Origin: Laetmonice hystrix
Taxonomy: Eukaryota
Length of the DNA stretch: 64,000 nucleotides
NCBI GenBank assembly: GCA_965235115.1
Contig: OZ249437.1
Location: forward strand, 33,480,001 to 33,544,000
Reading direction: 5' to 3'
Shown: piece after piece, positions 3,001 to 36,704 of the stretch
Layout of the letters: each line of letters opens with the position of its first letter
How positions within the stretch are numbered: the first letter of the stretch is position 1
Made by a program: the position numbers and the translations under genes
The notes under the pieces: generated by a model
Seen by the model: the letters and a program-made list of their open reading frames with translations, nothing else
Told to the model about the DNA's origin: nothing
Database searches by the model: none

Positions 3001-6000
3001 TTTGATCTCACCGACAGCGGTGTCCGTGGGATGGTCTCTGACCAACTGTTGGCGTGTTGGGTTGTTGCTGCAGCCGTGTTACAGGCCCACTGACACAGAC
3101 CAGAGACTTGCGATACCTGCCCCATCTGGCGGATTGTCGACAAACTAAATCATACGGGCCGCGAGTATGACCAAGTCGATACATGTTGTCAGGAAACTGA
3201 TCCCATTCCAAACCCGAACCTGTAGGTTTCACGCAAACTGCTCGTTTGGAACAAAAAGTGACCTGGGCAGTTCCGTTGGGAGATGACGGAATGCCAGCCA
3301 GAACAACAACATCCCCGAATGTTATTTCTGTGATATCATGATCCTCATATTGTGCTGGTCCGAAATAACCATGCCAGTGTCTTGCAGTGCCGTTCGTTCT
3401 AAGCAAGCGATGTGGCGATCCTGGGGTGTGGGTTAGCGGTGTTAAAGTGGCTCACCAGCCGTGCTCACGTGTTGTATGTATGTGTGTCCATCAGTTGTGT
3501 ACTCTGTCGGCAGTGTTTGGGTAAACTTGATACGGAGGCAGGAAGCGGTGGCTACAGGGATGCGGCAGGAGGGAACATGGATGGTGGTGAGATGAAGTGG
3601 TGGGCAGATGTAGAGCTGTTGGTACAGAAAACAACCTCCAGGTGTGCATCTGGGCAGGTGGCTTATAACCCCTGGAGGAACATAGGGGGCAACAGTATGG
3701 GCCTCTTATCTTGACTGTGATGTTGAAACCTCGCGCTTTTTGAACATTAAAATGGTAAACTAGAGAATGTTGCTTACAGTTGATATTGTGATACACGAGA
3801 GATTCGGGCAGGCATGTGGTATTCATATATTTGTGGCTTGTTCCCAGTAAAGAGCTTCACAAAGAAAGAATGCATAAACATATTATGAGACGCCTGCAGT
3901 TACAGAAACAGCTCGGTAGCTTTGAAATCATGGTGGGATTTAATTTGCATGTGCAAGATTTAATGATAAAAAAGGTGTTCCTGTTAGCTTGCGGACACCT
4001 GCTGTCTATTCAGTGGAAAGGTTCGTTCAGGCTTTCACAGACAGATTTGTAAGTTAGTACTGTCCTGAAATTTAGTTGGATTAAATCCGACGTGTTACGT
4101 TGCACAAGAAAACATCTGTTAAGTGGGGAAAAAATGGCGACCTTATTCCCGCCCTGGTGTACTCATTGCTTGAGGAGTTTGGGGCAAAATGACTTCAGAG
4201 GTGAAGTTTTCAGGTTTTTTTTTAATTGACGTACATGAATGATATATTGTGCAATGTGTGAATGCCAACATTCCTTGCCTGTCAGGAGTAAAAGGTTACA
4301 TTAAAGGCTGTCAGCACAGTTCTCTACATGATCCTACCAACCCTGGTTGTCATGAGAAAATTTGGCTCTTTAGTCTAACCTTTGTCTGACCTTAGACTAA
4401 AGTGGTCCAAGTTCTGATTGACCTATGTATTGGTAACAGCTTAGAAATACCCTCGGGTTAGGTAAATGTACCCAAGTCAATGTGTTTGTTACTTATTGTT
4501 GAGACGTTGTCCCTGAGGAGGACCACTCAGTGGTGCCTGGTCGTCAATCAAGAGACATAGCCGAGCGTGAATCCCATCCGTGTTCAAAGGCCAACTGAGC
4601 TACTGTGACACAACTGGAAGATTGTCACAGGTGCTGCAATTATAGGTGCAGCCATTGTTTAGAGGCTGGCAGCCAGGAGATAGGGGATATTGTGGAGGGT
4701 GATGACACGCCTCGGTACCACGACACAGGGTCTAGGCGGTACGGGGGGTCGTCATCTAGGTGGTGTAAAGACAGGCATCTCCTCGTCAGGAACAATTGTG
4801 TTATTTACGGACCCTTATTTATATCAGGTGTTGACGTTTTTAGAGCCGTACACTGTTTTGTGGAGTCCAACATGACATGATTATTTGCGGCAGGAAAATG
4901 GATGTCAGTCGTATTGGTATGGTCTTTCACAGTCAATGCTGTTCAGCCTTTAGAATTTAGAAGAAAAAATGATAAAACATGTATAAATCACACTAGAAGG
5001 GAGTTGACATGTATGCAATATTTCGACACGATGTGGTTGGGTTGAGGTTGTGTGTAGAGGCGCTTACAGAGGGCGGTTAGACCAGCGGCGCGGGATATGA
5101 CAGTTGTTGGGTGAGATGGTTGGGTCGAGGTGAATCAGGTGTGCATGACGACCTCTGTAACACTGCTGAAGGAGTTACACTGACACCATGCAGCACCTAG
5201 TCACCTGCCGACAACCACATCAAAGCTGACGTATATCTTACACCTGAGAGACGCTCAGAGGTCAGGCAATACACCAGCACGACAACGTCGCTTTCCCTCC
5301 AGGTGGACAAAAAAATCGGATTCAAGTCTGGCCAGTTGAGGGGAAAAGTTCAACGGCCATGTGTTCCATGTTGTGACCCGTGTCAATGGCCGGGGAAGGC
5401 TCATGCCGTGGATGCTCAAGGCGCTAGGACACCGTTGCCATGAACCGGGAGGTGTACCTAGAGTCCCCTGTAGGGGGGGGGGACACATTCCATTGACCTC
5501 TTCATCCCTGCCTGGAGACGGCAGACGTCAACTTAGGCCAAACACTGGGAGTTTGTGGTTTCTCGGCGGGACAGTCCGACACGGGACAAGAACTCCGGGA
5601 TGTTCTACAAGTATTCAGTGAACGACTGAGCACTGAGCCTGCACTGATCGAGTGGGGACAGAGTCGGTTACAATCTCCGGCCTTGACTCACTCCGGACCC
5701 CTGTGTTTAATCCTTGGTAAGCTCACGTGTCAGGGACACATTAGTCATCCCTGAGACGGTTTCGTTGGTATAACTGGAGCCCGCTTCACTGATTAACGTT
5801 GTCGGCTAGTTAACAACAACCCTAATCTTATCACAGTGACAACGTGTACAGTGCCAATATGAAAGTCCACCGTTAATGTGGCTTATTCAGGAACGGTAAA
5901 TGTGAACCTCTCAACCTAATTCCCCGAGTGCAGCTCTGTACTTGCCTTGACCTCACGAACGGGACCAGAAGTTCATATTTCCACAAAGTTCATGTAGCTC

Positions 6001-6264: not shown

Positions 6265-6320
<56 letters not shown>
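6265..6320. repeat. (GCA)18-19 microsatellite
   Basis: Perfect trinucleotide run read directly. Confidence 0.98.
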
Positions 6321-6723
6321 TGGGAAGACGCCCAACAGACAGTGTGTCAGTCAGTGAGAGTCGGGAGATGCTAAAACTCCCAGACACAGCACGATATCTG
6401 GAACATGGATACAGACTGCATGGAGCACAGGCACTGAGGGAGATAAAAAATCCCAACCCAACCTCCTGAGCGAGTGATATACAAAGGGTACCGTCAAGTT
6501 CACATGTTATGGGAACAGGAGAATTGTTCGTAAATTGTTTCCTTCAGCACTGATGGCGAGGAAAGAAGTGAAGGAGGCGTATGGAATAGTAGGTTTCAGG
6601 GTGGTGTGAGTATAATAGAGACCAGAACCCACAAGTCCTGAATTCTGCACTACAATACACATCCCGCATCTATTGTGTAAACATAGCGGCACAAACGGCC
6701 AGGGACCTCGTGTCACTTTCCCC

Positions 6724-6736
6724 TGACCTTTGACCT
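6724..6736. promoter_or_regulatory. Perfect nuclear-receptor DR1 (TGACCTtTGACCT = AGGTCAaAGGTCA)
   Basis: Read directly, about 620 bp upstream of the candidate 7358 first exon. Motif match only. Confidence 0.3.
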
Positions 6737-7357
6737 AAGGAGGGGACGGGAGGGTACAGCTCGGAGCTGTATGTCGGAAGTATTGAATGGCCACAACCAT
6801 GTCCCTGTAACCACCGACGCTTCCAGGAGGACGCCGTGAAGTTTATGTAAGTACAAGGGACCGCCCCCCCCTCCAGATAACTGGGCGGGTGAGCCAGCTG
6901 GTTGCTACGGTTGGTGGTGCCTACAGGAGCACGTGCTGGGTGAGCTACTGCCGGGAGTAGCTCAACGTGAGGCCGGCCGGCGGGCGCACGGTGCCACTTC
7001 CCAAATGTGTATCTGACCTGCAGCCGGCCTGATCGGTGGCAGTGGCTCTGTAACCCATCCAGTGAGGTCCTGTTTAAAACTCCGCTACCTTCTGGCCACA
7101 ACTCTACCGGCATACCGGCCAGTGGTGCCGATGGATCCCCTTGGAGCGCACCCACACGGCGGATTTCTTACCGGAGCCTTCAAAACGCAGCTTAATGGTG
7201 GACAAGGATGATAAACCCGCTACTAGTACACTAGTGCTTTGTGCACCGTTCCCAGAAACACCCCCTGGGATTAGCGTTTCCTCAACACTTACCTTTTGTT
7301 CCTGGATTGCCTGTAGTATGCGGAACGTTGCGAAGATAGCTTAGCAAAGCAGCCGAA

Positions 7358-7423
7358 ATGTTGTGTGGATGTGGACGGAAGAAGAAAAAGAAGAAGAAGG
7401 ATGAAGAAGAGGAAAAGAGACCG
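7358..7423 (+). CDS. shot: Candidate alternative first coding exon: MLCGCGRKKKKKKKDEEEEKRP (palmitoylation-type plus polybasic N-terminus) splicing to CH2
   Basis: First ATG after in-frame TAG (7337-7339), G at -3; 22 open codons; donor CCG|gtaatt in phase 0 (same intronic hexamer as the exon 9 donor), matching the phase 0 acceptor at 15763; preceded by a CpG-rich island at about 6700-7350. Confidence 0.65.
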
Positions 7424-10400
7424 GTAATTATTTATTTCACTCCAACAAAAGTTTTATAACAGCGTTTTCTTACTCTTTCCTTTAGGCTCCGATCGTGCCA
7501 GGTTAGACTGTCAGAGAGGGTTTTGTTTGTTTTACCAGCCTGTTTGTATGATGTGGTCATGTAGCCGTCACCGAGATTCATTATGTCACGGAATGTTTTA
7601 GACATGTCTGGGAGGTCGGAGTTGTTATTTTAACAGCCTGCAAGCTGTGCCTCGTAACAACGCCACTGTTTACATAACCAAACTTCACTGACTGTTCTCA
7701 CTGGAGTCTCTCACATCGGATCCGTAAAGTAGGTCTACAAACCCGCCCACTAACTTACCTTAAACCAGATATTGGGTGGGGAGGGGAGCAATCACCTCAG
7801 GTGAAACCATCGTGACATTGGCATTCTCTCAACCTCGTGTTGATTTATGGCCTGGCTGGCCCGCAGCGAACGTTCAGACACTTTGTGTGAGCACCAACCC
7901 CATCTATACCAGACAGAAACAGGGAAACACGGCGAATACCAGCAACATTTACGATCACTGGCACGGCCGTCTAAAAGTTCAGCCTAAATATAGGTTAATG
8001 TTCCGTTCAGAATTTGTGGATGAGGATGGGAAAAAATCCGAAGGTCAATGACTAGGTTTGTTCACACAAAGATACCTGAATTGTTAATTTTTTTCTTGAT
8101 AAAATACCTTCTGTCATTTATTTTGATAGATGTGATGTCAAGATAACACTGCTAAAGTGCATCTAGATGAAATTGGGGTTGTAATGTCACCTGTATGTAT
8201 CTGGATAGTGTGTACATTTGAAGTTTATGTACATACCAGAATATAACAAGTAGAAGCTTGTTCTGTTCATATAGCGATTGTCCCCAGGAAACTTGCCGCA
8301 GACTAAACCCTAAGAACTATCCAAGGAAGGGGAGAAAATCCGATTGTTGAATTTGTACAGTAGTAGCGTGAAAATAGCTCTATGTGGGAGCATGTAGGGC
8401 ATGTACAAGGAGATTTACCACTCTAATGTATGAGTTTAGTGCCCATTCATGGGTGAAAGAAAGACACAGTTAGGTGCCAATGTCTAGCTGATTACTCAAC
8501 TGGCACATTGAATCGAAGAGCATTTCTCTGTTGATTGTTGTCGTCTGGGTACCGAAATATTCTGCAGAAGTACTTTCTATCATAAAAGATTAAAGTTTTG
8601 TTAGATTTTGTTTAGGGGGGGGGGATTCATGATCTCTAGACTGTTTATCCGATCCAGAGTTGGTAAATTTCGTGCGTTGTCATCTTCTGCAGGAATTTTC
8701 TTCTAGCAGTAGAACAAGGTTGCAATGATGTAAAGTTTTGAAGGCCTTGCTATGATTTTGAAGTTCAGCGAACGAGTCGATCACATAGTAACTGTAAGCC
8801 GTGATTAAGATATAACATAGGTAATGCAGACTTGCGTGAAACATATACTGTATATTATGAGATGATTAATGAAGCAGACATTCACTATTAATGGCCATCA
8901 AGATCGGATATCACAGTGGGACGTGCCCGAGGTGGTCTTGAATGAACCGGGGGTGGTGGCCACAGACAGATGATCCTCCTCCACGACCACATGGGATTAT
9001 CCTGGATAAACCCAGCAGGGAATTTATGATTAGACCCCACCATATGGCACTAAGGCATGGCAGGATAAGCCGTCTAACAGAAATAGAATAACGTTCTTCA
9101 AGTTGACCTTGATGCGGGTCGAACCCTTGAGGGGAAGTAGTTATAATTAAACGGGTTATCAAAGAACGTGATATCATATGTCGGCATGTAAGAGACAAGG
9201 TGACTGATATGTCTGCCGGTTCTGGTGGTCAGTATTATTATAAGGCGGCTGGCTATACCTTCCCAGGGTGTTCCCTATGTACCCAGGAATGGTCAGTAGT
9301 TCAGGATGGGCAGTACCGGGTCATGACCTACCCCAAGTGAGCTGGACTGGAGTTTTCAAGTATGGCCAGCTGGGGCTAAAAGTGGGTCAGTGGCTTCACA
9401 CGTGGGTGTCAATCGTTTGGTAATTAAATCAACACAAGTAGGCCCGGCAATTATAATTATCGTCTATATTTAGTGAAGACACCGTCGTCATGTCAATCAC
9501 TCTATTTGTGTAGCTGATTAAATTAGCAGGTTATTGGGGTCTGTTATAAACTTTATATAGGCCTACTGGGTACAAATATGATGGTATCTATAGCCCTCAG
9601 GGTAAGTCGGTGTTTGGATAGCATTAACATGGTATGAAGATAACGGTGGCCGTTACTGTAGTAATAGTGCCGCCGCCGGGAGGCAGTAAACTTGTTAAAG
9701 TCAGTACCAAGTCTATAAATGCTTGGGGAAGGACGCTTGAGAAACTACCCAGCCGTGTTAAAAGGATAATCGTCGATAGACAATTATGTCGTTGATCCTC
9801 TCATTATGAGGAGGATATAGAGATAGTTGAAGGCAGATGGTCCGTTACCCTGCCACTTTGATCAGCTATCTCGTTAGCTTCAGGTGGATTATTCCCCGGA
9901 CAATTCTTATTCTAAGATAAACCTGGGAAGATAAACCTCATATACAGTAAGCCTAGGCAACATGACAACGCTGCCTTGGCAAGGTAATAAAGGCAGATTT
10001 GACCGAAGAAGAAACTGGCAGTGGGAGAATAGATTGGCTAGATGCATACGTCTGAGCCGAACTCGTATAACCCACATCCTAGGCCCGTGTAGAGATAAGT
10101 GGAGGCATGATCACAGGTAAGGTTTATCTTGGGTGATCACTGGAGTGACACCTGAAAGGTAAAATAGATCGTAACCTGATGAAACCATGGGTAGTTCAAG
10201 TCTTTCACACCTGACAATCAGATTCAACAGGTGTGATACTCAGGAGTGAAGGACAACAGGTGTTTGTTTCTGCTGGCCGGTTGCATGAGTCGCAGAGTAA
10301 TTTTACTATAACAAACCCAGCATGGTTTAAAAAGGGCGCGGTGCGGTGTGGAACGGTAGCTAGCCTACGATACAGGTATAGCTCGCAGGCCCATGCACTG

Positions 10401-11292
10401 AGTCATGTGGCACATAGGAGCTTTCATCTACCACATCCTCAACCCAAAGGTAGAGTTCAGTCTGTGGTTCTGAATACTGACGGGTTGAAATCAGCAGAGC
10501 TTTACACAGCGGTGGTAGTGGAGCCGGGAAAATCATTTAAGTGGGATGGGAGACTGATTGGTTAATTTCCAACATTTTAAGATACTGAAACCATAGGAGA
10601 AAGGCGATGCGTATTATGTATTTATTGTCTGTTAAATGTTGATGCATTACCTTTTCATTGAATGTTGTTTTGTGGCCAGGGGTCTGTGTCATATTGAGGT
10701 AACAAATCCTGCGTGAAATATAACCAACCCGGGAGTTTACATTAGATCAGTAATTTAATCAGGAATACAGGTACAATATACATATAAATAAATATTCTTC
10801 CCTAATTACTTTTTACGGCACTCTGGTGTAAACAGTTTGGTTACTGACAGATGGTGCAGCAGGTATGCAAACAAGATTTTCTCCGATTTCTGAAAGTGCG
10901 TAAAACATTATGATAGATGGATTGTTAGGCCATCCCAGTCGCCTACTTATAAATAAGGTAAAAAACCTATATGTTTGTAGTATTGTATTACCTGACTTTA
11001 CGTACAGGGATTGTTGAATTCAACTGAAACCTAGCATGACTGAAAGCTTTTACATCTGACTCTGGTGTCAGGTTTTAACCTACGCTACATGTCAACATCG
11101 TTGTCAATAAAGGCCATACTTTATTGAGTGACATATACATTGTACAGATACGTGTTTGAATCGATCCATTAAGTAATTAAAACAGTAATTGGCCTCTGGG
11201 CGGTGTTTTGTGTCATTGCTCCGGCAGGCCGTTGATGTGAACGAGGCCAACCCAGTAAGGGTCACTGACTCCGCGCCTAATGCGAAGTCATT

Positions 11293-11306
11293 GTCACCAT
11301 GGCAAC
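11293..11306. promoter_or_regulatory. Consensus RFX X-box GTCACCATGGCAAC
   Basis: Matches GTYNCC-AT-RGNAAC; lies in a local GC-rich island. Motif match only. Confidence 0.4.
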
Positions 11307-13309
11307 GTGTCATCGCCGTTCTGGTTTACGGAGGAAATAGATTTCTTCCATGTAAAGTATAAGAACGGGCATTCTTTGAGGGTTCAAGAAAATAAGAGAG
11401 GGTTGTGAACTGTTTGAGGCATTTCGTGCATTATATTAGGATTAGATGCTGAATTGGAAAAGTCTATCAGGAGGAATTCAGGATGTTTTCCTAACCAGTC
11501 AGTACTAGTTTTCTGAAATGTTATGGTAATCTTGCATTTGGAAAATTTTTAAACAATGCATGATATTTCTAAAAGTGAATTTGTCTCCTGCGATACCCAC
11601 TTTTCAAGTTTGGTTGGTGTGTTGGGGGCCACATTCAGCCGACTCTAAACCTCTACTAAACCTTGAAGACAACCCCAGCGGTAGTTCGACCATTGTCCTA
11701 ACAACAAGGCACTATGTACATCACAAAAATGATTTCCCGCCATTGTTTTCCATGATTCACTCCTGGTGCATCCATGTTAAATTACAGGTGTAACCGAGTG
11801 CTTTGATTGCCCCGGGTAAGGTCACAGGAGTCGGCACCATGGTGCAGTAGAATGACCTCCGGTATCAGTCGGGTGCCCTGACCCTGAGAGATGTTTAATG
11901 TCCAGGCCCTGATCTCCCTACGTCATGCCAGGTCCGACTTGTTGAAACTCTCTGTAGACAGAGTGTTCTCTGTGTGCCAGGTAGTAAGCCAGACAGGCAG
12001 TATTCTAACCTGGGGCTTACCTACTGTAGACAAGTTAGAAGTTAAGGCCAGATTGGTAGGCAGTACTTCGCCAATTCCCTGTCATTCACAGTGGTGCGAG
12101 TAAAGACCAGCGGGGAGGTAGCATTAAGTACGGCTGCCAACAACGAAGGTTTTACCTTCGAATAGAGTTTACAAAAAGAGTTATTTTTTCCCATCTGGAC
12201 ATGTTGATCAGGTCTAGTCTTGATTTTAAGCAACAGGATAAACAGCTCTGCACTTAGATTATTGCCAAAAACGAAATTCGCGTGATGTTTTGTATTGTGC
12301 AGAGAAATATCCCCTAAGATAATACGACGTGTGATAGACTTCATATTCAACAAGGTTATTCATGCGTGAAGCATAGTTTTAAAAACATCTATGAACTTCT
12401 GTCTATGGACGTCTGTAGGTATTTAGGATTTTATAGGCGGAGGAGGGAGGGGGTCGAATTTCTATTATTATATATTGCGGGCAGATAGTGTTAAGAGCAG
12501 AGAGCCCGAAGTGATACCAAGAAGAAAAAATTACTTGTGTTAGTGGCCCCAGTAACTGAGGTGCGTGTAGATGTGGTCAGGCGGTGTTTTGGGATGCTCA
12601 GGACTCAGTCGGAATGTAAGGTCATTGTTGGGGTCAGATGACCGTGAGCAGTGCCCGTGGGACGGTTATTGGGCCGTGAAGGTGAAGAGGTTGGCCGTGA
12701 GCCGAGAACTGTCTGACCGACATGATGATTGATGGACGGGTAGAATTTAGGACACCTGAGAATGACTGTGAAGTCCTGAAAGTAGTCCCAGCTGGCTGCT
12801 ACTACTCCTGCTGCTGCTGTGTTTCCTCCAGTAGCTCACCTGGCCAGGCACATACACACGTTATGTTATTTGTTCCTCTAGCTTTTTCAGGAAAGGCATT
12901 TTTATAATCCTTCTAATTCTTCGCCTTCACCTTTGCTTTCTCTTTGGGTTTCTTCTCCGTCATCATGCACCCTTTGCTTTTTCCCCCCGACTGCCATCAG
13001 TGTTGTAAGCCTCCCTGGCTTGATTTCTGACTTGAATTTGTCGTAACCTTGACATTTGCAGCAGCTGTTTCTACCTCAGCTGATGTTGTTCTGTAAGGGC
13101 ATTGGCTGTTCGCCATCCTACCATGTCAACAATTCAATCCATCTTGTTTCTCTTTCTCCTAACTTGCTTTCATCCTCTTCACATTCCCTATTGATGATTG
13201 ATTTCGAACATTCCTTCACCAGTAAGAAGATTTTTGAGAAGTAATATGGAAGCATGATGGAGGTGACCATGACTGTGTGGTGTTTTAATGTTTAATTTTT
13301 AAACTTATA

Positions 13310-13660: not shown

Positions 13661-15762
13661 TAAATGGCTCGGGACACATAGGGACCTACCCAGAATTAGT
13701 GCCGCTCCTTAACGTCACCTTCTATGAGTGGGAGGAACAGGGGTCAGTTTCACACCGGTCCTGAAACGGCATCCGAACCCCGTAATCTGACCCTTCAGGC
13801 TCCACCAGGAACCCCCTGACGCTACCTACTGGAGGGGGCTCTTCACACAGGAGGAGGTCACATAGAGCAGGAGATGGGACGCTTTTCTAGGTGTAAAAAC
13901 TTTCATGACTTCCACACATGCTGTAGATAAGGAGAGATTTCTCTATAGACAGGCATCATTTGTTAGAAGTCGATTTATAGCCGGTAGAAAGCCTATAGAG
14001 TGGCATGCCAATAAACAATCGAAGTTTCTCCCCTGTAAAGACTGTGTGCCAGAATACTGGATTCTTAACTTCTTAACGAAATCCACGGTCCATTGCTGGT
14101 AAAATATTGGCTGTGGATTTCGTTAAGTAGTTTTGCTGCGGAATTACGACATAATATATTACGTAGAAGCTATGTGAGTGCCTGATGGTGAAAACTCTTA
14201 TTTAAGCCTTGTGCAACCATTACATGTGGCTAGATTGAGTGGTTAGTCACAAATAATCTCCTTATAGATTATAATACAGACCTTACTTATGAAATTCCAG
14301 AGAAGGAAAGTGGTACTGACGATAACATAAGGTGTTTAGTTGGTATGGGCAGTAAGTTAGCTGTAGGTCTGCAGTCTTGGAGCAGTCCTGAAACCTACCT
14401 TTTAGATATCTATAGATGGAGCAGTTGGAAGGAGTGTTTTCAAAGTTTCCTAGAGCAGAGAAGAAGACTATTTACTTGATTAATCTAGTGCGGATGAAAG
14501 GAGATTTTTGCCTGTGTTACGTTTGTTGGAATACATTGTTCAGTCAGTTCAGTCAAAGTTCGAGGTCAGAGTTCCATTTTTTGACGATATAGGATGCTCA
14601 CGTGTGTGAAGTAGCTGTAATTTTATGGGGTGCCGTTATATTTATGATTTACGTTATTTTTATGACATTTACAGTTCATTCCATTGAAAGGCCACTTTCG
14701 TAACACAGAGGAGGCATACATCCCTTTAAGCAGAGCCATTTATGGTACTTTAGACTTAAATAGTTTGAATGTTTTTGAAGCTGCTGTCCTGATGTTGGAC
14801 TGAGGTTTCTGAATATATCAGAAATATGACAAAATAATGGTGGCAAACAAAATAATTGTAGCAAACGTGTTTCAAACAAAGATTGCAATGTCTGGTTGAG
14901 GCATACTTGGAGCAGTGCAGCTCGCATGTTGGCGACAGTTTTGGTTGGGAATTGGTGACTGCTGTCGTGGTTGGCTGAGGAGAGGTCGACAGGGATCGTC
15001 CTCGGCATTGCGTGCATGTCTAAGTGAACACTGACTGTAGGTGTAGGACTTCCCCTGAGGTTATTAATCTCTGCTCATAACGTCAAGTTTTCTCTGTAGT
15101 TGAGGAAGATACTGGTAGTCTGTGCGATACCAACATGGAGTGAAGATGGGCAGAATTGACTAAGTGTCTATGGGAAGGTTGTGTTTGAAACTTTCGGCAT
15201 GGATCGAGTCTCTGACTTGGTTGGAGGCAGATATCCAGCATACACAAGACGAAAGTGGCGAAGAAGCAAGAAAAAGGTAGGAAGGACAAGGACGGCTGGG
15301 TTTACACTAGGTAACAGCCTTTCTCTAGGTAACAACATCGATGACCGTGAACATACGCTAGACGGTTGGGTCAAATTCCATATTTCAGGTTTATATGAGT
15401 TGAGGGTTACCAAGAGCCACAGTTTTAATACCAGTGTTTCATGTTGATGGCCAGGAGGGAGACTTGTGATAGTTCAGGTGTTGTTACTGACCAATATCTT
15501 GCATTATTGATGATCGCAGTAACCTTAAGAATTGGTCTGACTTTTCCTGGAAGGAGAATCAACCCAAGTTATTCAGGAACGTGATTTCCGTTCCATATAT
15601 CGCACTCCCTTGCTCACCCTCATAACAAGGTGGAGATAAAGCCATAACACCATGCCCTGTCATTTTGTGTGTATTCATGCTAGTCCCGTTGAAACAATTA
15701 AAGCAGAGTTGACAGAAATCATCGCCCTCGATCCTAACGATGTTGTTTTGACTGTGTTGCAG

Positions 15763-15929
15763 ATTTCGGATGTTGTGGTGCCGGGGCAAGCTGAAGACTT
15801 GAGCGCCAAGGAAGCGCTGCTGCTATGGGCGCGGCGCACGGTGGAGGGGTACCCGGGCGTACGGATCCGGGATTTCTCCAACAGCTGGCGGGATGGCAAG
15901 GCTTTCCTCTCCATCATACACCGGCATAG
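15763..15929 (+). CDS. shot: Spectraplakin exon 1 in window: N-terminal half of CH2 domain ([56 protein letters not shown])
   Basis: Acceptor tgtgttgcag at 15753-15762, donor gtaagt at 15930; translation carries the CH2 signature EALLLW...F..SWRDG.AF..IIH of plectin/dystonin/MACF1. Phase 0 in, phase 2 out. Confidence 0.97.
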
Positions 15930-16384
15930 GTAAGTCGGTCTTGTGTTCCTCATACTGCAGTAGGTGTTGGTCCTTCATACACTGTCATAGGTAGGTCGGC
16001 CTTCCGTCCCTCATACTGCAGTAGGTGTTGGACCTTTATACACTGACATATAGGTAGGTCGGCCTTCTGTCCCTCATACTGCAGTAGGTGTTGGTCCTTC
16101 ATAAACTGTCATAGGTAGGTCGGTCTTCTGTCCCTCATACAGCAGTAGGTGTTGGTCCTTCATACACTGTCATAGGTAGGTCGGCCTTCGGTCTCTCATA
16201 CTGCAGTAGGTATTGGTCCTCCATACACCGGCATAGGTAGGTCAGTCTTGTGTCCCTCAAACTGCAGTAGGTGTTTGTCCTTCATACACTGTCATAGGCA
16301 GGTCGGCCTTCTGTCCCCCATACTGCAGTAGGTGTCGGTCCTTCACACACTGACATAGGTAGGTTGGCCTTCTGTCCCTCATAC
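15915..16384. repeat. 61-bp minisatellite, about 7.7 copies, starting inside the exon and spanning the donor site; degenerate copies to about 16550
   Basis: Unit catacactgtcataggtaggtcggccttctgtccctcatactgcagtaggtgttggtcctt; first copy is catacaccggcatag|gtaagt. Confidence 0.95.
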
Positions 16385-19300
16385 GTAAGACTAGAGGGGT
16401 CGGGCCATAAAGCACTTGCGTAGGAACTTTAGCCATCTGTCCCTAAGAGAGAAGAGGGGTTGGTCCTTCTTCAGACACCAGAAGAGGTAGGTTGACCTTC
16501 TGTCCCTCATACAGTGGACTCGAGGAGTTGTCCTTCATACACTGACATTGGTGCGGAAACCGCCTGATACCAACACAGATAGGTAGTAGTGATACTCGAT
16601 TCTCATAACCCCCCTGAAAATGTTCGAAAACCCGACTTGGTTATAGAGTAAGTGTAGCTATGGCTCCTCAGAGGATGATAGAGTACGCATTCTTTGGTGA
16701 TCACCTTGACGCCGGGAGGAGGAGGGGGCGGGTACCTTGGTTGGTATACACGGTACATACGCACACACACACAACTGACACTAATATTATTCATAGCAAA
16801 AGGGGATCGGACTTTGTTGGCGACCGAAGCGGTAGACCTGCAAAGGCCTGGAGCAGTCGTCCGAGGCTCGGATGGTTAAATCACAGCAGTAGATTGTGTA
16901 AACTTTGATATATTGAGCTTTGTCTAAATGGGTTTCTGTCAGAGATGAATGGCACTACGGAGAAGTTGAATATAGGTGATAGCCAGCCAGCAGGTTAATT
17001 TCAACATTCATACATTGGGCACATTATTTCCTAATTTCATGCGAAGCGGATTATTCATTGTATTACAGGTCTTGCATGAAAATGTTCTGTAAATATTTGA
17101 GTATGCGTAACATTCCAGGTTGTTTTCTTGTAACCTGTTGGTAGGTTGTTTAAAAAGTCTACCCTGGGGGTTGAACAAGTAGGCATGAAGTGTTGCAGGA
17201 AACTGTTGTCATCTTAGCCCTCAGTAGATCGGGTCTGGCATCTTGAGAGCACAGCTTGAACTGGGTTTGTTGAATAAGAGTGCTTCAATTCTAGTGTCAA
17301 TGAACAACACAGGGCAAGGTGTCATGATTGCTTATTTATGGCAGATCTTCAAGCGGGTGACCTATGACCTGGGTGACCTGACCTTTAGGGCGAGTGATAA
17401 GGCCGCCCTTCACCCTTGATTGCTGATGTGTGATAACTGTGTTAGTTATTCAGGCTGAGTTCTAGCAGAGGTTGTACAGATAGGCCCTCCATGGTGAAGC
17501 CAGAGAGAGAGAATGTTGGGAACCTGCCGTGATAGTTAGGGAAGGAACCACTCGTAATGCCAAGGCTGGGCTAGGGTCACCGTCCGTCAGGTGTTTGGGG
17601 CCATTATAACTGGCATTTGTTTACATAATTTATCGAGCCGGTGGAATTCATATATCAGCCAGGTAGTTTTTTTCCCGCCTACCCTGGATCGATTATATTT
17701 GAGCAGCTTGCTGTTCGATATGTTGAAACAAGATTCTGTGATGATTAAAGCCGATCACGTCATCATTGATTGATCGTCATGTACGGGGATGGAGGTTTAG
17801 ACTTTAATACCAGATTGTGGGTCGTAGGTCCCATTGTGGTACCTTCAGCTTGAAGTGGGTTCATGAGTGACCCACTAACAGGTAAATTCCATGCAAACCC
17901 AGCCAACCAAGCAATATTGAATCTCGGCAGAGGTCAGTGCAGTCGTAACCTCACCAGGTCACCGCGGTGACGCATACTCCAGAGCCCCCTGGTGACAACA
18001 GTGATAACTAAACCGAAGACCACTCATTTATTGGATCACATAAGTGAGACTGGGTCAGAAATTTTCAGTTTTCACCAGTAAATACTTTCAAGGGGGTGAC
18101 ATTCACAAAATGTAGGGGCTAGCTCTGGAGAATGAGTATTGTGGATTCTCCATGAAGACAGGAGGGCTTCAACTTTTTGATCTCTTGTGCGAGAGACCTA
18201 CAAATATTTTGAATTCTTCAAATGCATTTAGGTAGACTGTGGCTGAGAGAAGACCCTTGAGGGGAGGGGAACCGAAAGTGTAGGGGCGTAGGGCTAACAT
18301 AATATTGATGGACCTGGCATGTAGCTGAGGAGAATGAATGATAATCTTCTCGGCAGGTGGGCAGGGTAAGGGGTAACAAGAGGGGGTATTTGGAAGAGGT
18401 TGGTATCAGGAACTTCCAACCCCAGCGTTTCTCTAGTAGGACCGAGGTCTGAACCCCTATAGGAAAAGACACCTTCAGTCAGAGAAAGCCGACTCGAGAT
18501 CGGCATGAATTATGATTCACCTCAGTCAACCAGTGGTGGGTTTTCAACTATGAGGAGAATGGGGTCATATCGTAACCTTGCAATCTGAGGTTTGTGATCT
18601 CTGAGTGTGGACAAATATTGTTTGTGATCGTGTGTGAGAGAGATGGTTTGAAAGAAAACTGTAGCCTCTGTCGTTACACGGACTTTGGGTTGAGTTTCTT
18701 CCTCGACCTCCCCACCTCCTCCGAACCGTTTTCAGGAGAGGTATGGGAGTGATCGTTCTTACTGTCCAGGTGATCACCTAGTTCTGAGAAGGGCCAAAAG
18801 GCAGGAGGAAAATTATTGCCTTTCAACTGCTGGTGTATAATTATGTGTCAGTGTGCTGTATATCATGGAGATAGAAATTAGAATTGATGACGTCTTAAAG
18901 AATTGAGGACATGCCGGTACAGATTTCTATCCCGTCCTTTTGTTCCACGCCAACCCATGTCTGTGACTACCACATTCCTCAGGCAGTGTGCTGTGTGCCG
19001 GACCGATCGTTCCGTCATTATAGGTGTGCAGGGTTTGTCAGGTGGGGCGGCGCCTACTCCCTCACAACGGGACGCATTGTCCAGCCGGCCGGCTTCTCCC
19101 GTCCCCAGTCGGGGGGGTAATCCCCCCCCCCCTGCTCCCCCCCCCTCCTGACGACCTGTCCTGGCCGTATACTGGCACTGTTTGTGTTTGGGCTGAAGGT
19201 GTTTGCCCCCCTGGTTGACGGCATGTACCCTCACCGTGTCCGGCAAACTACACACCCTACCACCAGGGCCTGGAGACCCTGATCGTGATCAGGGCGACTT

Positions 19301-19971
19301 CTCTCTGTCTGTGTGTCCACAATCAACACTATAGTCTTTCACAGAGTCAGGCCTCAAGTTTGTCCAACCAGATCTGGATCCTTATACGACTAGGGTATTG
19401 TCAGACGACAGTTTAGTTTATCCACGAAGCCAGCACATTCTTGAGTCGAGTATCTGTAGTAGGATGGATACTCCACAGCAAGCGCGTGGATCATAACTGG
19501 ACCCTGTGGGTATGTGCGAGTCCTTTGAGGTCGTTAGAGCGTGGACAATAGCGATTCGAGCCTGTATTTTAATGTTGAGATCTAGGTGTGATAATAAGGT
19601 GTGCACGGTGTAGTGGTCACAGAAACACTTTGTAAGCCTTTCTGTACAGCCGAGTGGATTACCGGCCTGTTGGGGCAATATTTGTGATGCACTCAACACC
19701 TGGTGGCAAGGACAAAGTACAGCTACAAACTGTGCTCCTGGATCAGGGCTAGATCTTACTGTTTCACCAAGTAAGGTTATAACTACTCTGAATGAATACA
19801 AGACGTTCAGTGATACTCGTGTAAAATACCTAAAAACTGGTAAAAATGGTGGTAATATAATTGATGTGGGAATCGAGATTATTGTCCTGCTGAATGTTGC
19901 AGGTGTTATGTGTGTTTATTATTATAAAAGAAGTGGTGTTATAATGAGGGAGTGTTGGTCGGTTTGTACAG

Positions 19972-20087
19972 GCCTGATCTGGTCGACTTCCGTACGGTGT
20001 CCACCCAGACAGCCAAGGAGAACCTCGAGATGGCGTTCAGTATTGCCGAGAAGGAGTACCAAGTCACCAGGCTACTTGACCCGGAAG
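19972..20087 (+). CDS. shot: Spectraplakin exon 2: CH2 (PDLVDFRTVSTQTAKENLEMAFSIAEKEYQVTRLLDPE)
   Basis: tttgtacag acceptor, gtaagt donor; NLE.AF..AE....VTRLLDPED CH2 motif; phase 2 in, phase 1 out. Confidence 0.97.
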
Positions 20088-20771
20088 GTAAGTCCTCATC
20101 TGCTTCCACCGTTCTGAAGAAAATCGGTAGCTGACATTTGCCACTTTGTCTTTACCCTATAAGAATGTATATGGAGAAACGAAATTAATGGGTCGCCCTC
20201 AATATTGACATTTTCTCAGATACGACTGCTGTTACAGTAATCGTATTGCATTATAATGGAATGATTGTCTGTTTGAGACAATAGCTAAAATTCCTCTTTG
20301 ACAGTATAAAGAAATGATGGTACATGTGGAAGGATACAAGAAAATGCTGCGTAGGATAACATATAGGTTGTCAAGTTCTTTCACCTGGACTTCGGTACGT
20401 TTGCTAATGTTTTCGTTTATTGGCGAAAACGATAGTTCAATGGATAGATGTCAAAAGATTATCTCACTGTTCATCAAGATGTAACACGTCTCTCCTTCAA
20501 CCGGTGCAGGCCAATGGTTTGTCATATTTAAAAAATAAGGAAAAAAAGCCTTGGAGAATTGATATCTTTGATGTGGCTCTATCTATATTCTGTCAAGGGT
20601 TCTTCATATTTCGGCTGTAAACACTTGTATTGAAGATTGATGGGCTGATATCATATGTACCTGTTTACACCTTCTGAGGACAGAAAAAACGAATGAGGGG
20701 TTAATTTTACACAGTTCTACAGGACAGACCGAAACTAGGAGACAGATCCCTAGAGGTGGAAAACGAAATAC

Positions 20772-36491: not shown

Positions 36492-36704
36492 ATGGAGGAT
36501 GGGTCGTGGTGGTGGGGTGGGGAGAACGTGGAGCAGGCAGGGACTGCCACTGGAGAAGTCGAGTACATGGACCTCCAGTACGGCTGTATGGAGGTGTATG
36601 TACTGGAGATGATGGGGCTGGATGTGTTTATGGAGTGGCCGTATGTGGCTGTGCCCTTTGTACTGGTCATCGGTGTACTCGTCGTTCTGGTCCTGTTTCT
36701 GCGG
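36492..36704 (+). CDS. shot: Candidate alternative first coding exon: 71 aa, acidic N-tail plus single transmembrane helix (YVAVPFVLVIGVLVVLVLFL-R), splicing to plakin exon 6
   Basis: Strong Kozak caccATGG after in-frame TAG (36462-36464); 213 nt open; consensus donor CGG|gtaagt in phase 0, matching the phase 0 acceptor at 40291; 20 consecutive uncharged, mostly hydrophobic residues; GC-box-like (accgccc) and inverted CCAAT (ctattgg) motifs 240-280 nt upstream. Confidence 0.7.

What the first reader, a model, noticed from the sequence alone, without database searches (positions are those of the whole stretch)
7358..7423. Hidden first exon encoding a lipid-anchor N-terminus (MLCGCGRKKKKKKK) spliced onto CH2
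Seen: ATG with G at -3 after an in-frame stop, 22 codons MLCGCGRKKKKKKKDEEEEKRP, phase 0 donor CCG|gtaatt matching the CH2 acceptor at 15763, and a CpG-rich upstream island with a perfect DR1. It is too short for the ORF track. Established: N-terminal di-Cys plus basic residues is a palmitoylation/plasma-membrane signal (GAP-43 MLCCMRRTK). Vertebrate dystonin/MACF1 'a3' isoforms lack CH1 and have a lipidated unique N-terminus joined to CH2 (from memory DST-3 starts MGNVCGCVR; verify). Inference: this invertebrate makes a CH1-less, membrane-targeted spectraplakin using CGC plus a heptalysine patch without the myristoylation Gly2. That would mean deep conservation or convergence of the a3 design.
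Basis: partly seen in the sequence, partly recalled or inferred. Interest (0 to 1): 0.8.

Follow-up and report, generated by a model that had tools for sequence, protein, structure and literature searches.

The report
Conserved Cys-polybasic first exon of spectraplakin
A tiny 22-codon exon hidden in a 27-kb intron of a giant cytoskeletal linker gene (a spectraplakin) is conserved in related invertebrate genomes and probably gives a version of the protein that lacks half of its actin-binding domain and starts with a membrane-anchoring Cys/lysine-rich tag, much like a known vertebrate isoform; no RNA evidence is available yet.

Summary
It lies in the 27.4-kb intron between the last CH1 exon and the phase-0 CH2 exon at 15763.

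This structure alone is not beyond chance. The same intron holds 5 equally good ATG-ORF-donor candidates, codons 8-21 are an AAG/GAA microsatellite, the donor is weak, and there is no CpG enrichment.

Conservation rescues it. A relative's contig (L015) carries MFCGCGRKKKRKK... 4.6 kb upstream of its CH2 exon, and this is the only conserved block there besides known exons. A degenerate pattern for the first 10 codons hits once in the 627-Mb genome, never in 596 Gb of prokaryote genomes, and three times in metagenome contigs. One of those hits has the same CCG|GTAAYT donor. All five copies have a phase-0 donor.

Vertebrate dystonin isoform 3 (MGNVCGCVR...CH2) and a sea-urchin model (MGCKPCKCCGC..., one exon joined to CH2) confirm the comparison.

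Splicing to CH2 and lipidation remain inferred. The one RNA-like run shows nothing at the exon.

Verdict: probably a real alternative first exon, a new variant of the type-3 spectraplakin N-terminus. Confidence about 0.6, interest moderate.

The parts
7358..7423 (+). Coding part of the candidate alternative first exon: 22 codons, MLCGCGRKKKKKKKDEEEEKRP. The 5' UTR and transcription start are unknown.
   Evidence: Read. It is homologous to L015 5413-5465 (80% nt identity) and L019 766-825 (83%, E 1e-11). The 10-codon degenerate pattern is unique in the 627-Mb genome.
7424..7431 (+). Phase-0 splice donor GTAATTAT (CCG|GTAATT). It is weak: +5 is T.
   Evidence: Simple PWM score is 2.4, against 5.4 for the CH1 donor. 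L019 has the same CCG|GTAACT directly after its 21st codon. Without splicing the ORF stops after 33 codons.
7337..7339 (+). In-frame TAG, 6 codons upstream of the ATG
7378..7418 (+). Imperfect (GAA/AAG)n trinucleotide repeat that encodes the K7 and DEEEE runs
   Evidence: Tandem Repeats Finder: period 3, 13.7 copies, 75% matches. It is the only part of 6650-7500 with other matches in the genome.
15763..15929 (+). First CH2 exon ([22 protein letters not shown]...), phase-0 acceptor ttgcag|ATT. This is the proposed splice partner.
   Evidence: (Pfam CH, 36.6 bits), 13/21 and 66. It is 79% identical to Tegillarca granosa and 73% to Haliotis CH2.
19970..20086 (+). Second CH2 exon
   Evidence: tblastn with P0155/P0012
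21723..21830 (+). Third CH2 exon
   Evidence: tblastn with P0155/P0012
6724..6736 (-). Perfect DR1 (AGGTCA A AGGTCA), 620 nt upstream of the ATG. Its relevance is unsupported.
   Evidence: It is not conserved in L015, L018, L019 or L020.

Best explanation
7358-7423 is the coding part of a real, evolutionarily conserved alternative first exon of this spectraplakin (MACF1/dystonin/Shot-like) gene. It lies in the 27.4-kb intron between the last CH1 exon (window -11772..-11681) and the first CH2 exon (15763).

Proposed mechanism: transcription from an internal promoter, then splicing of the phase-0 donor at 7423/7424 to the phase-0 CH2 acceptor. This would give a CH1-less (type-3 / C-type) isoform that begins M-L-C-G-C-G-R-K7-acidic.

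Likely function of the leader: by analogy with GAP-43 (MLCC + basic residues) and dystonin-a3 (MGNVCGCVR), Cys3 and Cys5 are probably S-acylated. The polybasic run would bind acidic phospholipids and hold the weakly actin-binding giant linker at a membrane.

Shown: the sequence features, the position in the gene, the phase compatibility, the conservation of the N-terminal motif, and uniqueness in the genome.

Inferred: transcription, the splice to CH2, lipidation and membrane targeting.
For: 1. Position. CH1 exons lie upstream, the last ending CAA|GTAAGT at window -11681. The CH2 exon starts at 15763. Both junctions are phase 0, as is the candidate donor.

2. Unbiased conservation. In relative L015 (CH2 78% identical), the only blastn matches to the window over 20 kb are the CH2/plakin exons plus 5413-5465, which matches window 7358-7413. 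That match starts at an ATG 4.6 kb upstream of L015's CH2 and encodes MFCGCGRKKKRKKGEDDDD. No other conserved block lies between the leader and CH2 in either genome.

3. Pattern search. The degenerate DNA pattern for M-[LF]-C-G-C-G-R-K-K-K has about 2^-45 chance per site. It hits once in the own 627-Mb genome, with 0 hits for the reversed control. It hits 0 times in 596 Gb of prokaryotic genomes and 3 times in JGI metagenome contigs. L019 extends the match to 60 nt (E 1e-11) and has the same CCG|GTAAYT donor after codon 21.

4. Coding-type divergence. TGT/TGC, GGA/GGC, CGG/CGT/AGG/AGA and AAA/AAG vary, while the peptide stays the same.

5. Donor phase. All five copies have a phase-0 GTAA donor before their ORF ends, after codons 22, 21, 61, 174 and 179. 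In the three short copies it is the only candidate donor.

6. The design exists elsewhere. Vertebrate dystonin isoform 3/7 is MGNVCGCVR + about 250 aa + CH2 with no CH1 (PMC6975176; PMC3352950). The sea-urchin model XP_041483743.1 (P0228) starts MGCKPCKCCGCFGSR; it is one 113-codon exon, a 25-kb intron, then CH2.

7. The region is single-copy and not a transposon.
Against: - No RNA evidence exists. No run on record as RNA holds 7150-7423.
- X4 is the only RNA-like run: 58 Mb in 274k contigs, longest 20 kb. It holds a small share of the CH2 region but no contig anywhere in 6400-12399.
- No protein in the 5.8-billion-sequence database joins such a leader to CH2. Length limits and contig breaks at splice branches make this a weak negative.
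- The donor is weak (score 2.4).
- Two thirds of the exon is an AAG/GAA microsatellite.
- ORF plus donor is expected by chance about 5 times in this intron.
- Four other relatives with CH2 contigs (L011, L016, L017, L021) show no such motif in the 1.7-10 kb available upstream.
- L018, L019 and L020 cannot be tied to a spectraplakin gene, because their contigs hold no CH exons.
- There is no Gly2, so no myristoylation. Lipidation is pure inference.
Confidence: 0.6

Rival explanations
1. Chance ORF. An AAG/GAA microsatellite preceded by an ATG and followed by a weak GT happens to read as Cys plus polylysine. It is neither transcribed nor spliced.
For: Five equally good ATG-ORF-phase-0-donor candidates lie in the same intron. 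Codons 8-21 are low complexity. The donor is weak. There is no CpG enrichment. The RNA-like run X4 has no contig at the exon.
Against: The non-repetitive first 24 nt (ATG..CGGAAG) differ from L015 at only 2 positions. The motif lies in the same orientation upstream of CH2 in L015. The 10-codon pattern is unique in the genome and absent from 596 Gb of prokaryote DNA, yet it recurs in 3 more eukaryotic contigs, each followed by a phase-0 donor. Substitutions are of the synonymous type.
Confidence: 0.1
2. A real conserved coding first exon that belongs to a separate nested transcript, or that splices to an exon other than CH2. Examples are a small membrane-anchored protein gene inside the intron, or an exon skipping further downstream.
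For: In L015 and L020 the ORF runs 192-193 codons and in L018 98 codons, so these could stand alone. L018-L020 cannot be linked to CH exons. No leader-CH2 protein was found.
Against: In the window and in L019 the ORF is only 33 and 26 codons, so it needs a downstream exon. Between the leader and CH2 no other block is conserved between the window and L015. Phase 0 fits the CH2 acceptor. The same architecture is annotated in sea urchin and vertebrates. The long ORFs have no Pfam family and no homologues.
Confidence: 0.15
3. The exon is real and joined to CH2, but the leader is not a lipid anchor. The lysine run could act as a nuclear localisation signal, or as a microtubule, acidic-lipid or nucleic-acid binding patch. 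The cysteines could bind metal or be redox-active.
For: K7 and RKKKRKK resemble classical monopartite NLSs. There is no Gly2 for myristoylation. No lipidation data exist.
Against: The invariant part across all five copies is M-[LF]-C-G-C-G-R, not only the lysines. N-terminal Cys next to basic residues is the established GAP-43-type S-acylation signal (background knowledge). The same CGC core occurs in dystonin-a3 leaders, which are described as carrying myristoylation/palmitoylation sites (bioRxiv 10.1101/122010; PMC6975176).
Confidence: 0.15

Closest known systems
Vertebrate dystonin (BPAG1) a3/b3 and MACF1 type-3 N-termini. Example: mouse dystonin isoform 7, Q91ZU6-8, starting MGNVCGCVRAEKEE...
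   Same: An alternative first exon is joined directly to CH2, so CH1 is absent. A Cys-Gly-Cys core lies within the first 7 residues, followed by Arg and a charged stretch. Seen in P0131, P0138, P0140, P0201 and P0243. The literature describes these as a putative myristoylation/palmitoylation motif before a single CH domain (PMC6975176, PMC3352950, bioRxiv 10.1101/122010).
   Different: There is no Gly2 here: Leu2 or Phe2 in all five copies, so no N-myristoylation. A 7-8 residue lysine run replaces it. The leader is 22 aa here against about 250 aa in vertebrates (174-179 codons in L015 and L020). Similarity beyond the CGC-x-R core is not significant.
Sea-urchin (Lytechinus variegatus) model XP_041483743.1, named 'spectrin beta chain, erythrocytic-like'. 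It is actually the 5' part of the spectraplakin gene.
   Same: A single first coding exon with a Cys-rich N-terminus (MGCKPCKCCGCFGSR) and lysine-rich stretches, then a long intron (25 kb), then a phase-0 junction onto the CH2 exon ISEV... No CH1.
   Different: It has Gly2, more cysteines and a 113-codon leader. It is a deuterostome.
GAP-43 / neuromodulin N-terminal membrane-targeting signal (MLCCMRRTKQV)
   Same: Starts Met-Leu-Cys. It has two cysteines within the first five residues, directly followed by basic residues and then an acidic stretch. Met1 is expected to be retained (background knowledge).
   Different: It is an unrelated protein. Its cysteines are adjacent (CC), not CGC. This is a resemblance of mechanism only and was not tested.
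Drosophila Shot C-type and other ecdysozoan CH2-only isoforms
   Same: An internal promoter gives a leader joined to CH2 without CH1 (bioRxiv 10.1101/122010).
   Different: Ecdysozoan leaders found here (Plutella, Lepeophtheirus, Trichonephila, filarial nematodes) start MS.Y.FVKG.RLF.QGKR or MYKVLRSYSKK and have no N-terminal Cys. No function is reported for Shot lead sequences.

Membership tests
Type-3 / C-type (CH2-only) spectraplakin isoform | The first exon lies in the intron between the last CH1 exon and the first CH2 exon, on the gene's strand | tested here: met
   The last CH1 exon ends at window -11681, the leader is at 7358-7423 and CH2 starts at 15763, all on the + strand. L015 has the same order.
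Type-3 / C-type (CH2-only) spectraplakin isoform | The leader is spliced in frame directly onto the CH2 exon | tested here: inconclusive
   The phases match (0/0), and no conserved exon lies between them. No spliced read or protein was found.
Type-3 / C-type (CH2-only) spectraplakin isoform | Own promoter / transcription start upstream of the leader | not testable with these tools
   No RNA, CAGE or raw-read run is available. CpG o/e is at background level. The DR1 is not conserved.
Dystonin-a3-type lipidated leader | Gly2 for N-myristoylation (MG...) | tested here: not met
   Residue 2 is Leu (window, L020) or Phe (L015, L018, L019).
Dystonin-a3-type lipidated leader | Cys-Gly-Cys core within the first 7 residues, followed by Arg | tested here: met
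   M[LF]CGCGR here against MGNVCGCVR in P0131/P0243.
Dystonin-a3-type lipidated leader | Sequence homology of the leader beyond the motif | tested here: inconclusive
   blastp of the L015 leader against three vertebrate leaders: best E 3e-4 in a 3-sequence database, 27% identity with many gaps.
GAP-43-type N-terminal S-acylation signal | Cysteines within the first ~5 residues, flanked by basic residues, with Met1 retained | tested here: met
   Cys3 and Cys5, then R7 and K8-K14. Leu/Phe at position 2.
GAP-43-type N-terminal S-acylation signal | Cysteines actually S-acylated, and the protein membrane-bound | not testable with these tools
   Needs acyl-biotin exchange or metabolic labelling, plus localisation experiments.

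The most novel reading that the evidence does not exclude
The CGC leader joined to CH2 may be ancestral to bilaterians. On this reading the protostome M[LF]CGCGR-polyLys exon, the sea-urchin MGCKPCKCCGC exon and the vertebrate dystonin/MACF1 type-3 MGNVCGCVR exon are homologous. A membrane-anchored, CH1-less spectraplakin would then be more than 550 million years old. Lineages would have swapped the second membrane signal (myristoyl-Gly2 against a polybasic run), and ecdysozoans would have replaced the leader altogether.
Probability: 0.3. Interest if true: 0.6.

Novelty: new variant of a known kind. Interest (0 to 1): 0.5.

Why it matters
Spectraplakins link actin, microtubules and membranes. 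Their alternative N-termini decide where the giant protein works, but reviews state that no function is known for the invertebrate (Shot) lead sequences. The vertebrate a3 lipid motif is itself little studied.

A conserved 22-residue Cys/polybasic leader in a non-vertebrate would show that membrane tethering of a CH1-less isoform is a recurrent and possibly ancient design. It would also give a very small, easily testable targeting peptide.

The case also shows that gene annotation can miss micro-exons made largely of microsatellite sequence. Cross-species pattern searches can rescue them.

Tried and rejected
- RNA evidence: both run searches returned only one study. X1-X3 are DNA, since they cover all of 6400-12399 at 30-70x word depth. 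X4 looks like RNA but has no contig there. So expression could be neither shown nor excluded.
- Protein searches for a leader-CH2 product: a 77-aa spliced query, amphioxus CH1-less isoform P0017 and the L015 leader ORF found none. The tool's length window, and contig breaks at splice branches, limit what this negative means.
- CH2 search against 1.84 billion representatives. Most 'N-termini' before CH2 were translated intron from prokaryote-style gene calls. These were rejected as evidence.
- Other relatives' contigs (L011, L016, L017, L021): no leader in the 1.7-10 kb upstream that was available.
- The Tegillarca gene locus could not be fetched, because its range exceeds 100 kb.
- CpG island: rejected.
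- DR1 as a promoter element: real, but not conserved.
- Transposon origin: rejected, the region is single-copy.
- Rfam and Pfam on the surroundings and on the long leader ORFs: nothing.
- Ecdysozoan-type leader (MS.Y.FVKG...) in this intron: none.
- Literature search for the peptide strings: no paper.

Full report
**What is in the sequence.** The finding is accurately described.
- ATG at 7358 with G at -3, and an in-frame TAG six codons upstream (7337-7339).
- 22 codons reading MLCGCGRKKKKKKKDEEEEKRP.
- CCG|GTAATT at 7423/7424.
- If it is not spliced, the frame closes after 33 codons.
- The CH2 exon begins at 15763 behind ttgcag, in phase 0, and runs to 15929.

**Gene context.** The window is G000:C2:33480001-33544000. 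I fetched 100 kb upstream and mapped the CH1 exons.
- CH1 exons lie at window -42836..-42723, -13495..-13412, -12598..-12518 and -11772..-11681.
- The last ends ...ILHFQ with CAA|GTAAGT in phase 0.
- The candidate exon therefore sits inside the 27,442-nt CH1/CH2 intron. That is the place where vertebrate type-3 and Drosophila C-type first exons lie (bioRxiv 10.1101/122010).

**Is the structure more than chance? On its own, no.**
- With a simple donor matrix the candidate donor scores 2.4, against 5.4 for the CH1 donor.
- The same intron holds 103 GT sites scoring at least as well.
- It holds 26 ATG-ORF-phase-0-donor combinations.
- Codons 8-21 are an imperfect GAA/AAG microsatellite.
- The 'CpG island' is not there. 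CpG observed/expected is 0.6-0.8, against 0.66 for the whole region. Only G+C rises, to about 60% at 6800-7100.
- The perfect DR1 at 6724-6736 is real and mildly unusual. It is not found upstream of the homologous exons elsewhere.
- The region is single-copy apart from the AAG run, so it is not a transposon.

**RNA evidence.** None could be obtained.
- Both run searches found a single study of one sample.
- X1-X3 cover the whole of 6400-12399, so they are DNA.
- X4 has 58 Mb in 274,202 contigs, the longest 20 kb, which looks like a transcriptome. It holds 0.15 of the sampled words of 15500-15933. It has no contig anywhere in 6400-12399.
- This is weak evidence against expression in that sample. 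It is not proof: contigs drop rare isoforms, and X4's nature is not on record.

**Conservation changes the picture.** A CH2-exon search and a spliced-peptide search gave CH2 fragments from relatives, and I fetched their contigs.
- In L015 (ENA ERZ22147071; CH2 78% identical) only known exons match the window over 20 kb, with one exception.
- L015 5413-5465 matches window 7358-7413 at 80%. It starts at an ATG 4.6 kb upstream of CH2 and encodes MFCGCGRKKKRKKGEDDDD....
- No other block between leader and CH2 is conserved.
- The non-repetitive first 24 nt differ at only two positions, one of them synonymous.

**Pattern search for the first ten codons (about 45 bits).**
- One hit in the 627-Mb genome, namely this exon. 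The reversed control gave 0 hits.
- No hit in 596 Gb of prokaryotic genomes.
- Three hits in JGI metagenome contigs: L018 (MFCGCGRKKKKKAKGG...), L019 (MFCGCGRKKKKKKKKDRDLTP) and L020 (MLCGCGRKKKKKGKKGK...).
- L019 matches the window over 60 nt (E 1e-11), including 12 nt before the ATG. It ends with the same CCG|GTAAYTAT donor after codon 21.
- Differences among the five copies are largely third-position changes (TGT/TGC, GGA/GGC, four Arg codons, AAA/AAG). For L018-L020 this is partly imposed by the search pattern.

**Donor phase.** Every copy has a phase-0 GTAA donor before its ORF closes, after codons 22, 21, 61, 174 and 179. In the three short copies it is the only candidate donor. The picture is a first exon with a fixed M-[LF]-C-G-C-G-R-polyLys head and a tail of very variable length.

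**Caveats on conservation.**
- L018-L020 carry no CH exon, so they cannot be tied to a spectraplakin gene.
- Four other CH2 contigs show no motif in the 1.7-10 kb available upstream.

**Comparison with known isoforms.**
Several vertebrate proteins begin MGNVCGCVR(A/S)xKEE, run about 250 residues and then enter CH2 at ISDIHV without CH1. One is mouse dystonin isoform 7, Q91ZU6-8.
- Reviews describe dystonin-a/b3 as a putative myristoylation motif before a single CH domain (PMC6975176, PMC3352950). They note potential myristoylation or palmitoylation sites, and state that no function is known for Shot lead sequences (bioRxiv 10.1101/122010).
- A sea-urchin RefSeq model (XP_041483743.1) starts MGCKPCKCCGCFGSR... 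On its genome this is one 113-codon exon, a 25-kb intron and then the CH2 exon. The rest of the spectraplakin is annotated as the next gene.
- Ecdysozoan CH1-less leaders are different and lack Cys (MS.Y.FVKG.RLF.QGKR). An amphioxus CH1-less leader also lacks Cys.
- The copies found here share the CGC-x-R core with deuterostomes but have Leu or Phe instead of Gly2. So they fail the myristoylation criterion and carry a polylysine run instead.
- Similarity beyond the core is not significant. Homology against convergence stays open.

**Most likely mechanism.** This part is inferred.
- An internal promoter drives a transcript whose first exon supplies Met-Leu-Cys-Gly-Cys-Gly-Arg-Lys7.
- Splicing to CH2 removes CH1, the main actin-binding half (bioRxiv 10.1101/122010).
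- Met1 is retained before Leu or Phe. The lysine run brings the N-terminus to acidic membranes.
- Cys3 and Cys5 are then S-acylated as in GAP-43. This fixes the plakin/spectrin-repeat rod and its microtubule-binding C-terminus to a membrane.

**Confidence by step.**
- Conserved coding exon: about 0.8.
- Splice to CH2: about 0.65.
- Lipid anchor: about 0.5.
- Overall statement: 0.6.

**Rivals.**
- Chance ORF: 0.1.
- Exon of a nested or differently spliced transcript: 0.15.
- Real leader with a non-lipid role such as an NLS: 0.15.

**Verdict.** It is a new variant of a known kind, the type-3 spectraplakin N-terminus. It is of moderate interest, mainly for the evolution of spectraplakin isoforms and as a compact candidate membrane-targeting tag.

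**Earlier scan notes.** Notes on this genome flag the same gene as a giant spectraplakin and propose another intronic N-terminal exon at 36492-36704. I did not test these.

Noticed in passing
window 15910-16384: A 61-nt tandem array (7.8 copies, 86% matches) begins inside the last 20 nt of the CH2 exon. It repeats the exon end plus its donor (…CATAG|GTAGGT…), giving a string of decoy donor-like sites just downstream of the real one.
   Followed up: no
window 6265-6320: A perfect (GCA)18.7 microsatellite lies 1 kb upstream of the leader exon. It produced spurious Rfam hits (Afu_254, isrG).
   Followed up: partly
L010:2927-3265 (window -7074..-6736): A 113-codon ORF in the same CH1/CH2 intron, Ser/Thr-rich, with a purine at -3 and a phase-0 donor (score 3.4). 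It could be another alternative first exon or chance.
   Followed up: no
L022:10001-47025 (Lytechinus variegatus CM031031.1): The RefSeq model named 'spectrin beta chain, erythrocytic-like' (250 aa) is the CH2-only 5' part of the spectraplakin gene. The remaining 7277-aa model starts 2.2 kb downstream. This is probably one gene split in annotation.
   Followed up: partly
P0156, P0164, P0169, P0171, P0172, P0224, P0229: Arthropod and nematode CH1-less spectraplakin leaders share a conserved N-terminal motif without cysteine: MS.Y.FVKG.RLF.QGKR or MYKVLRSYSKK. This is a different, apparently ecdysozoan-wide leader.
   Followed up: no
window 17358-17370: A second DR1-like site (AGGTCATAGGTCA, 1 mismatch) on the minus strand, in the intron after the first CH2 exon.
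   Followed up: no
L016:1-1598 and 18868-20159: LINE-type reverse transcriptase / endonuclease ORFs flank the CH2 exon in one relative's spectraplakin introns.
   Followed up: no
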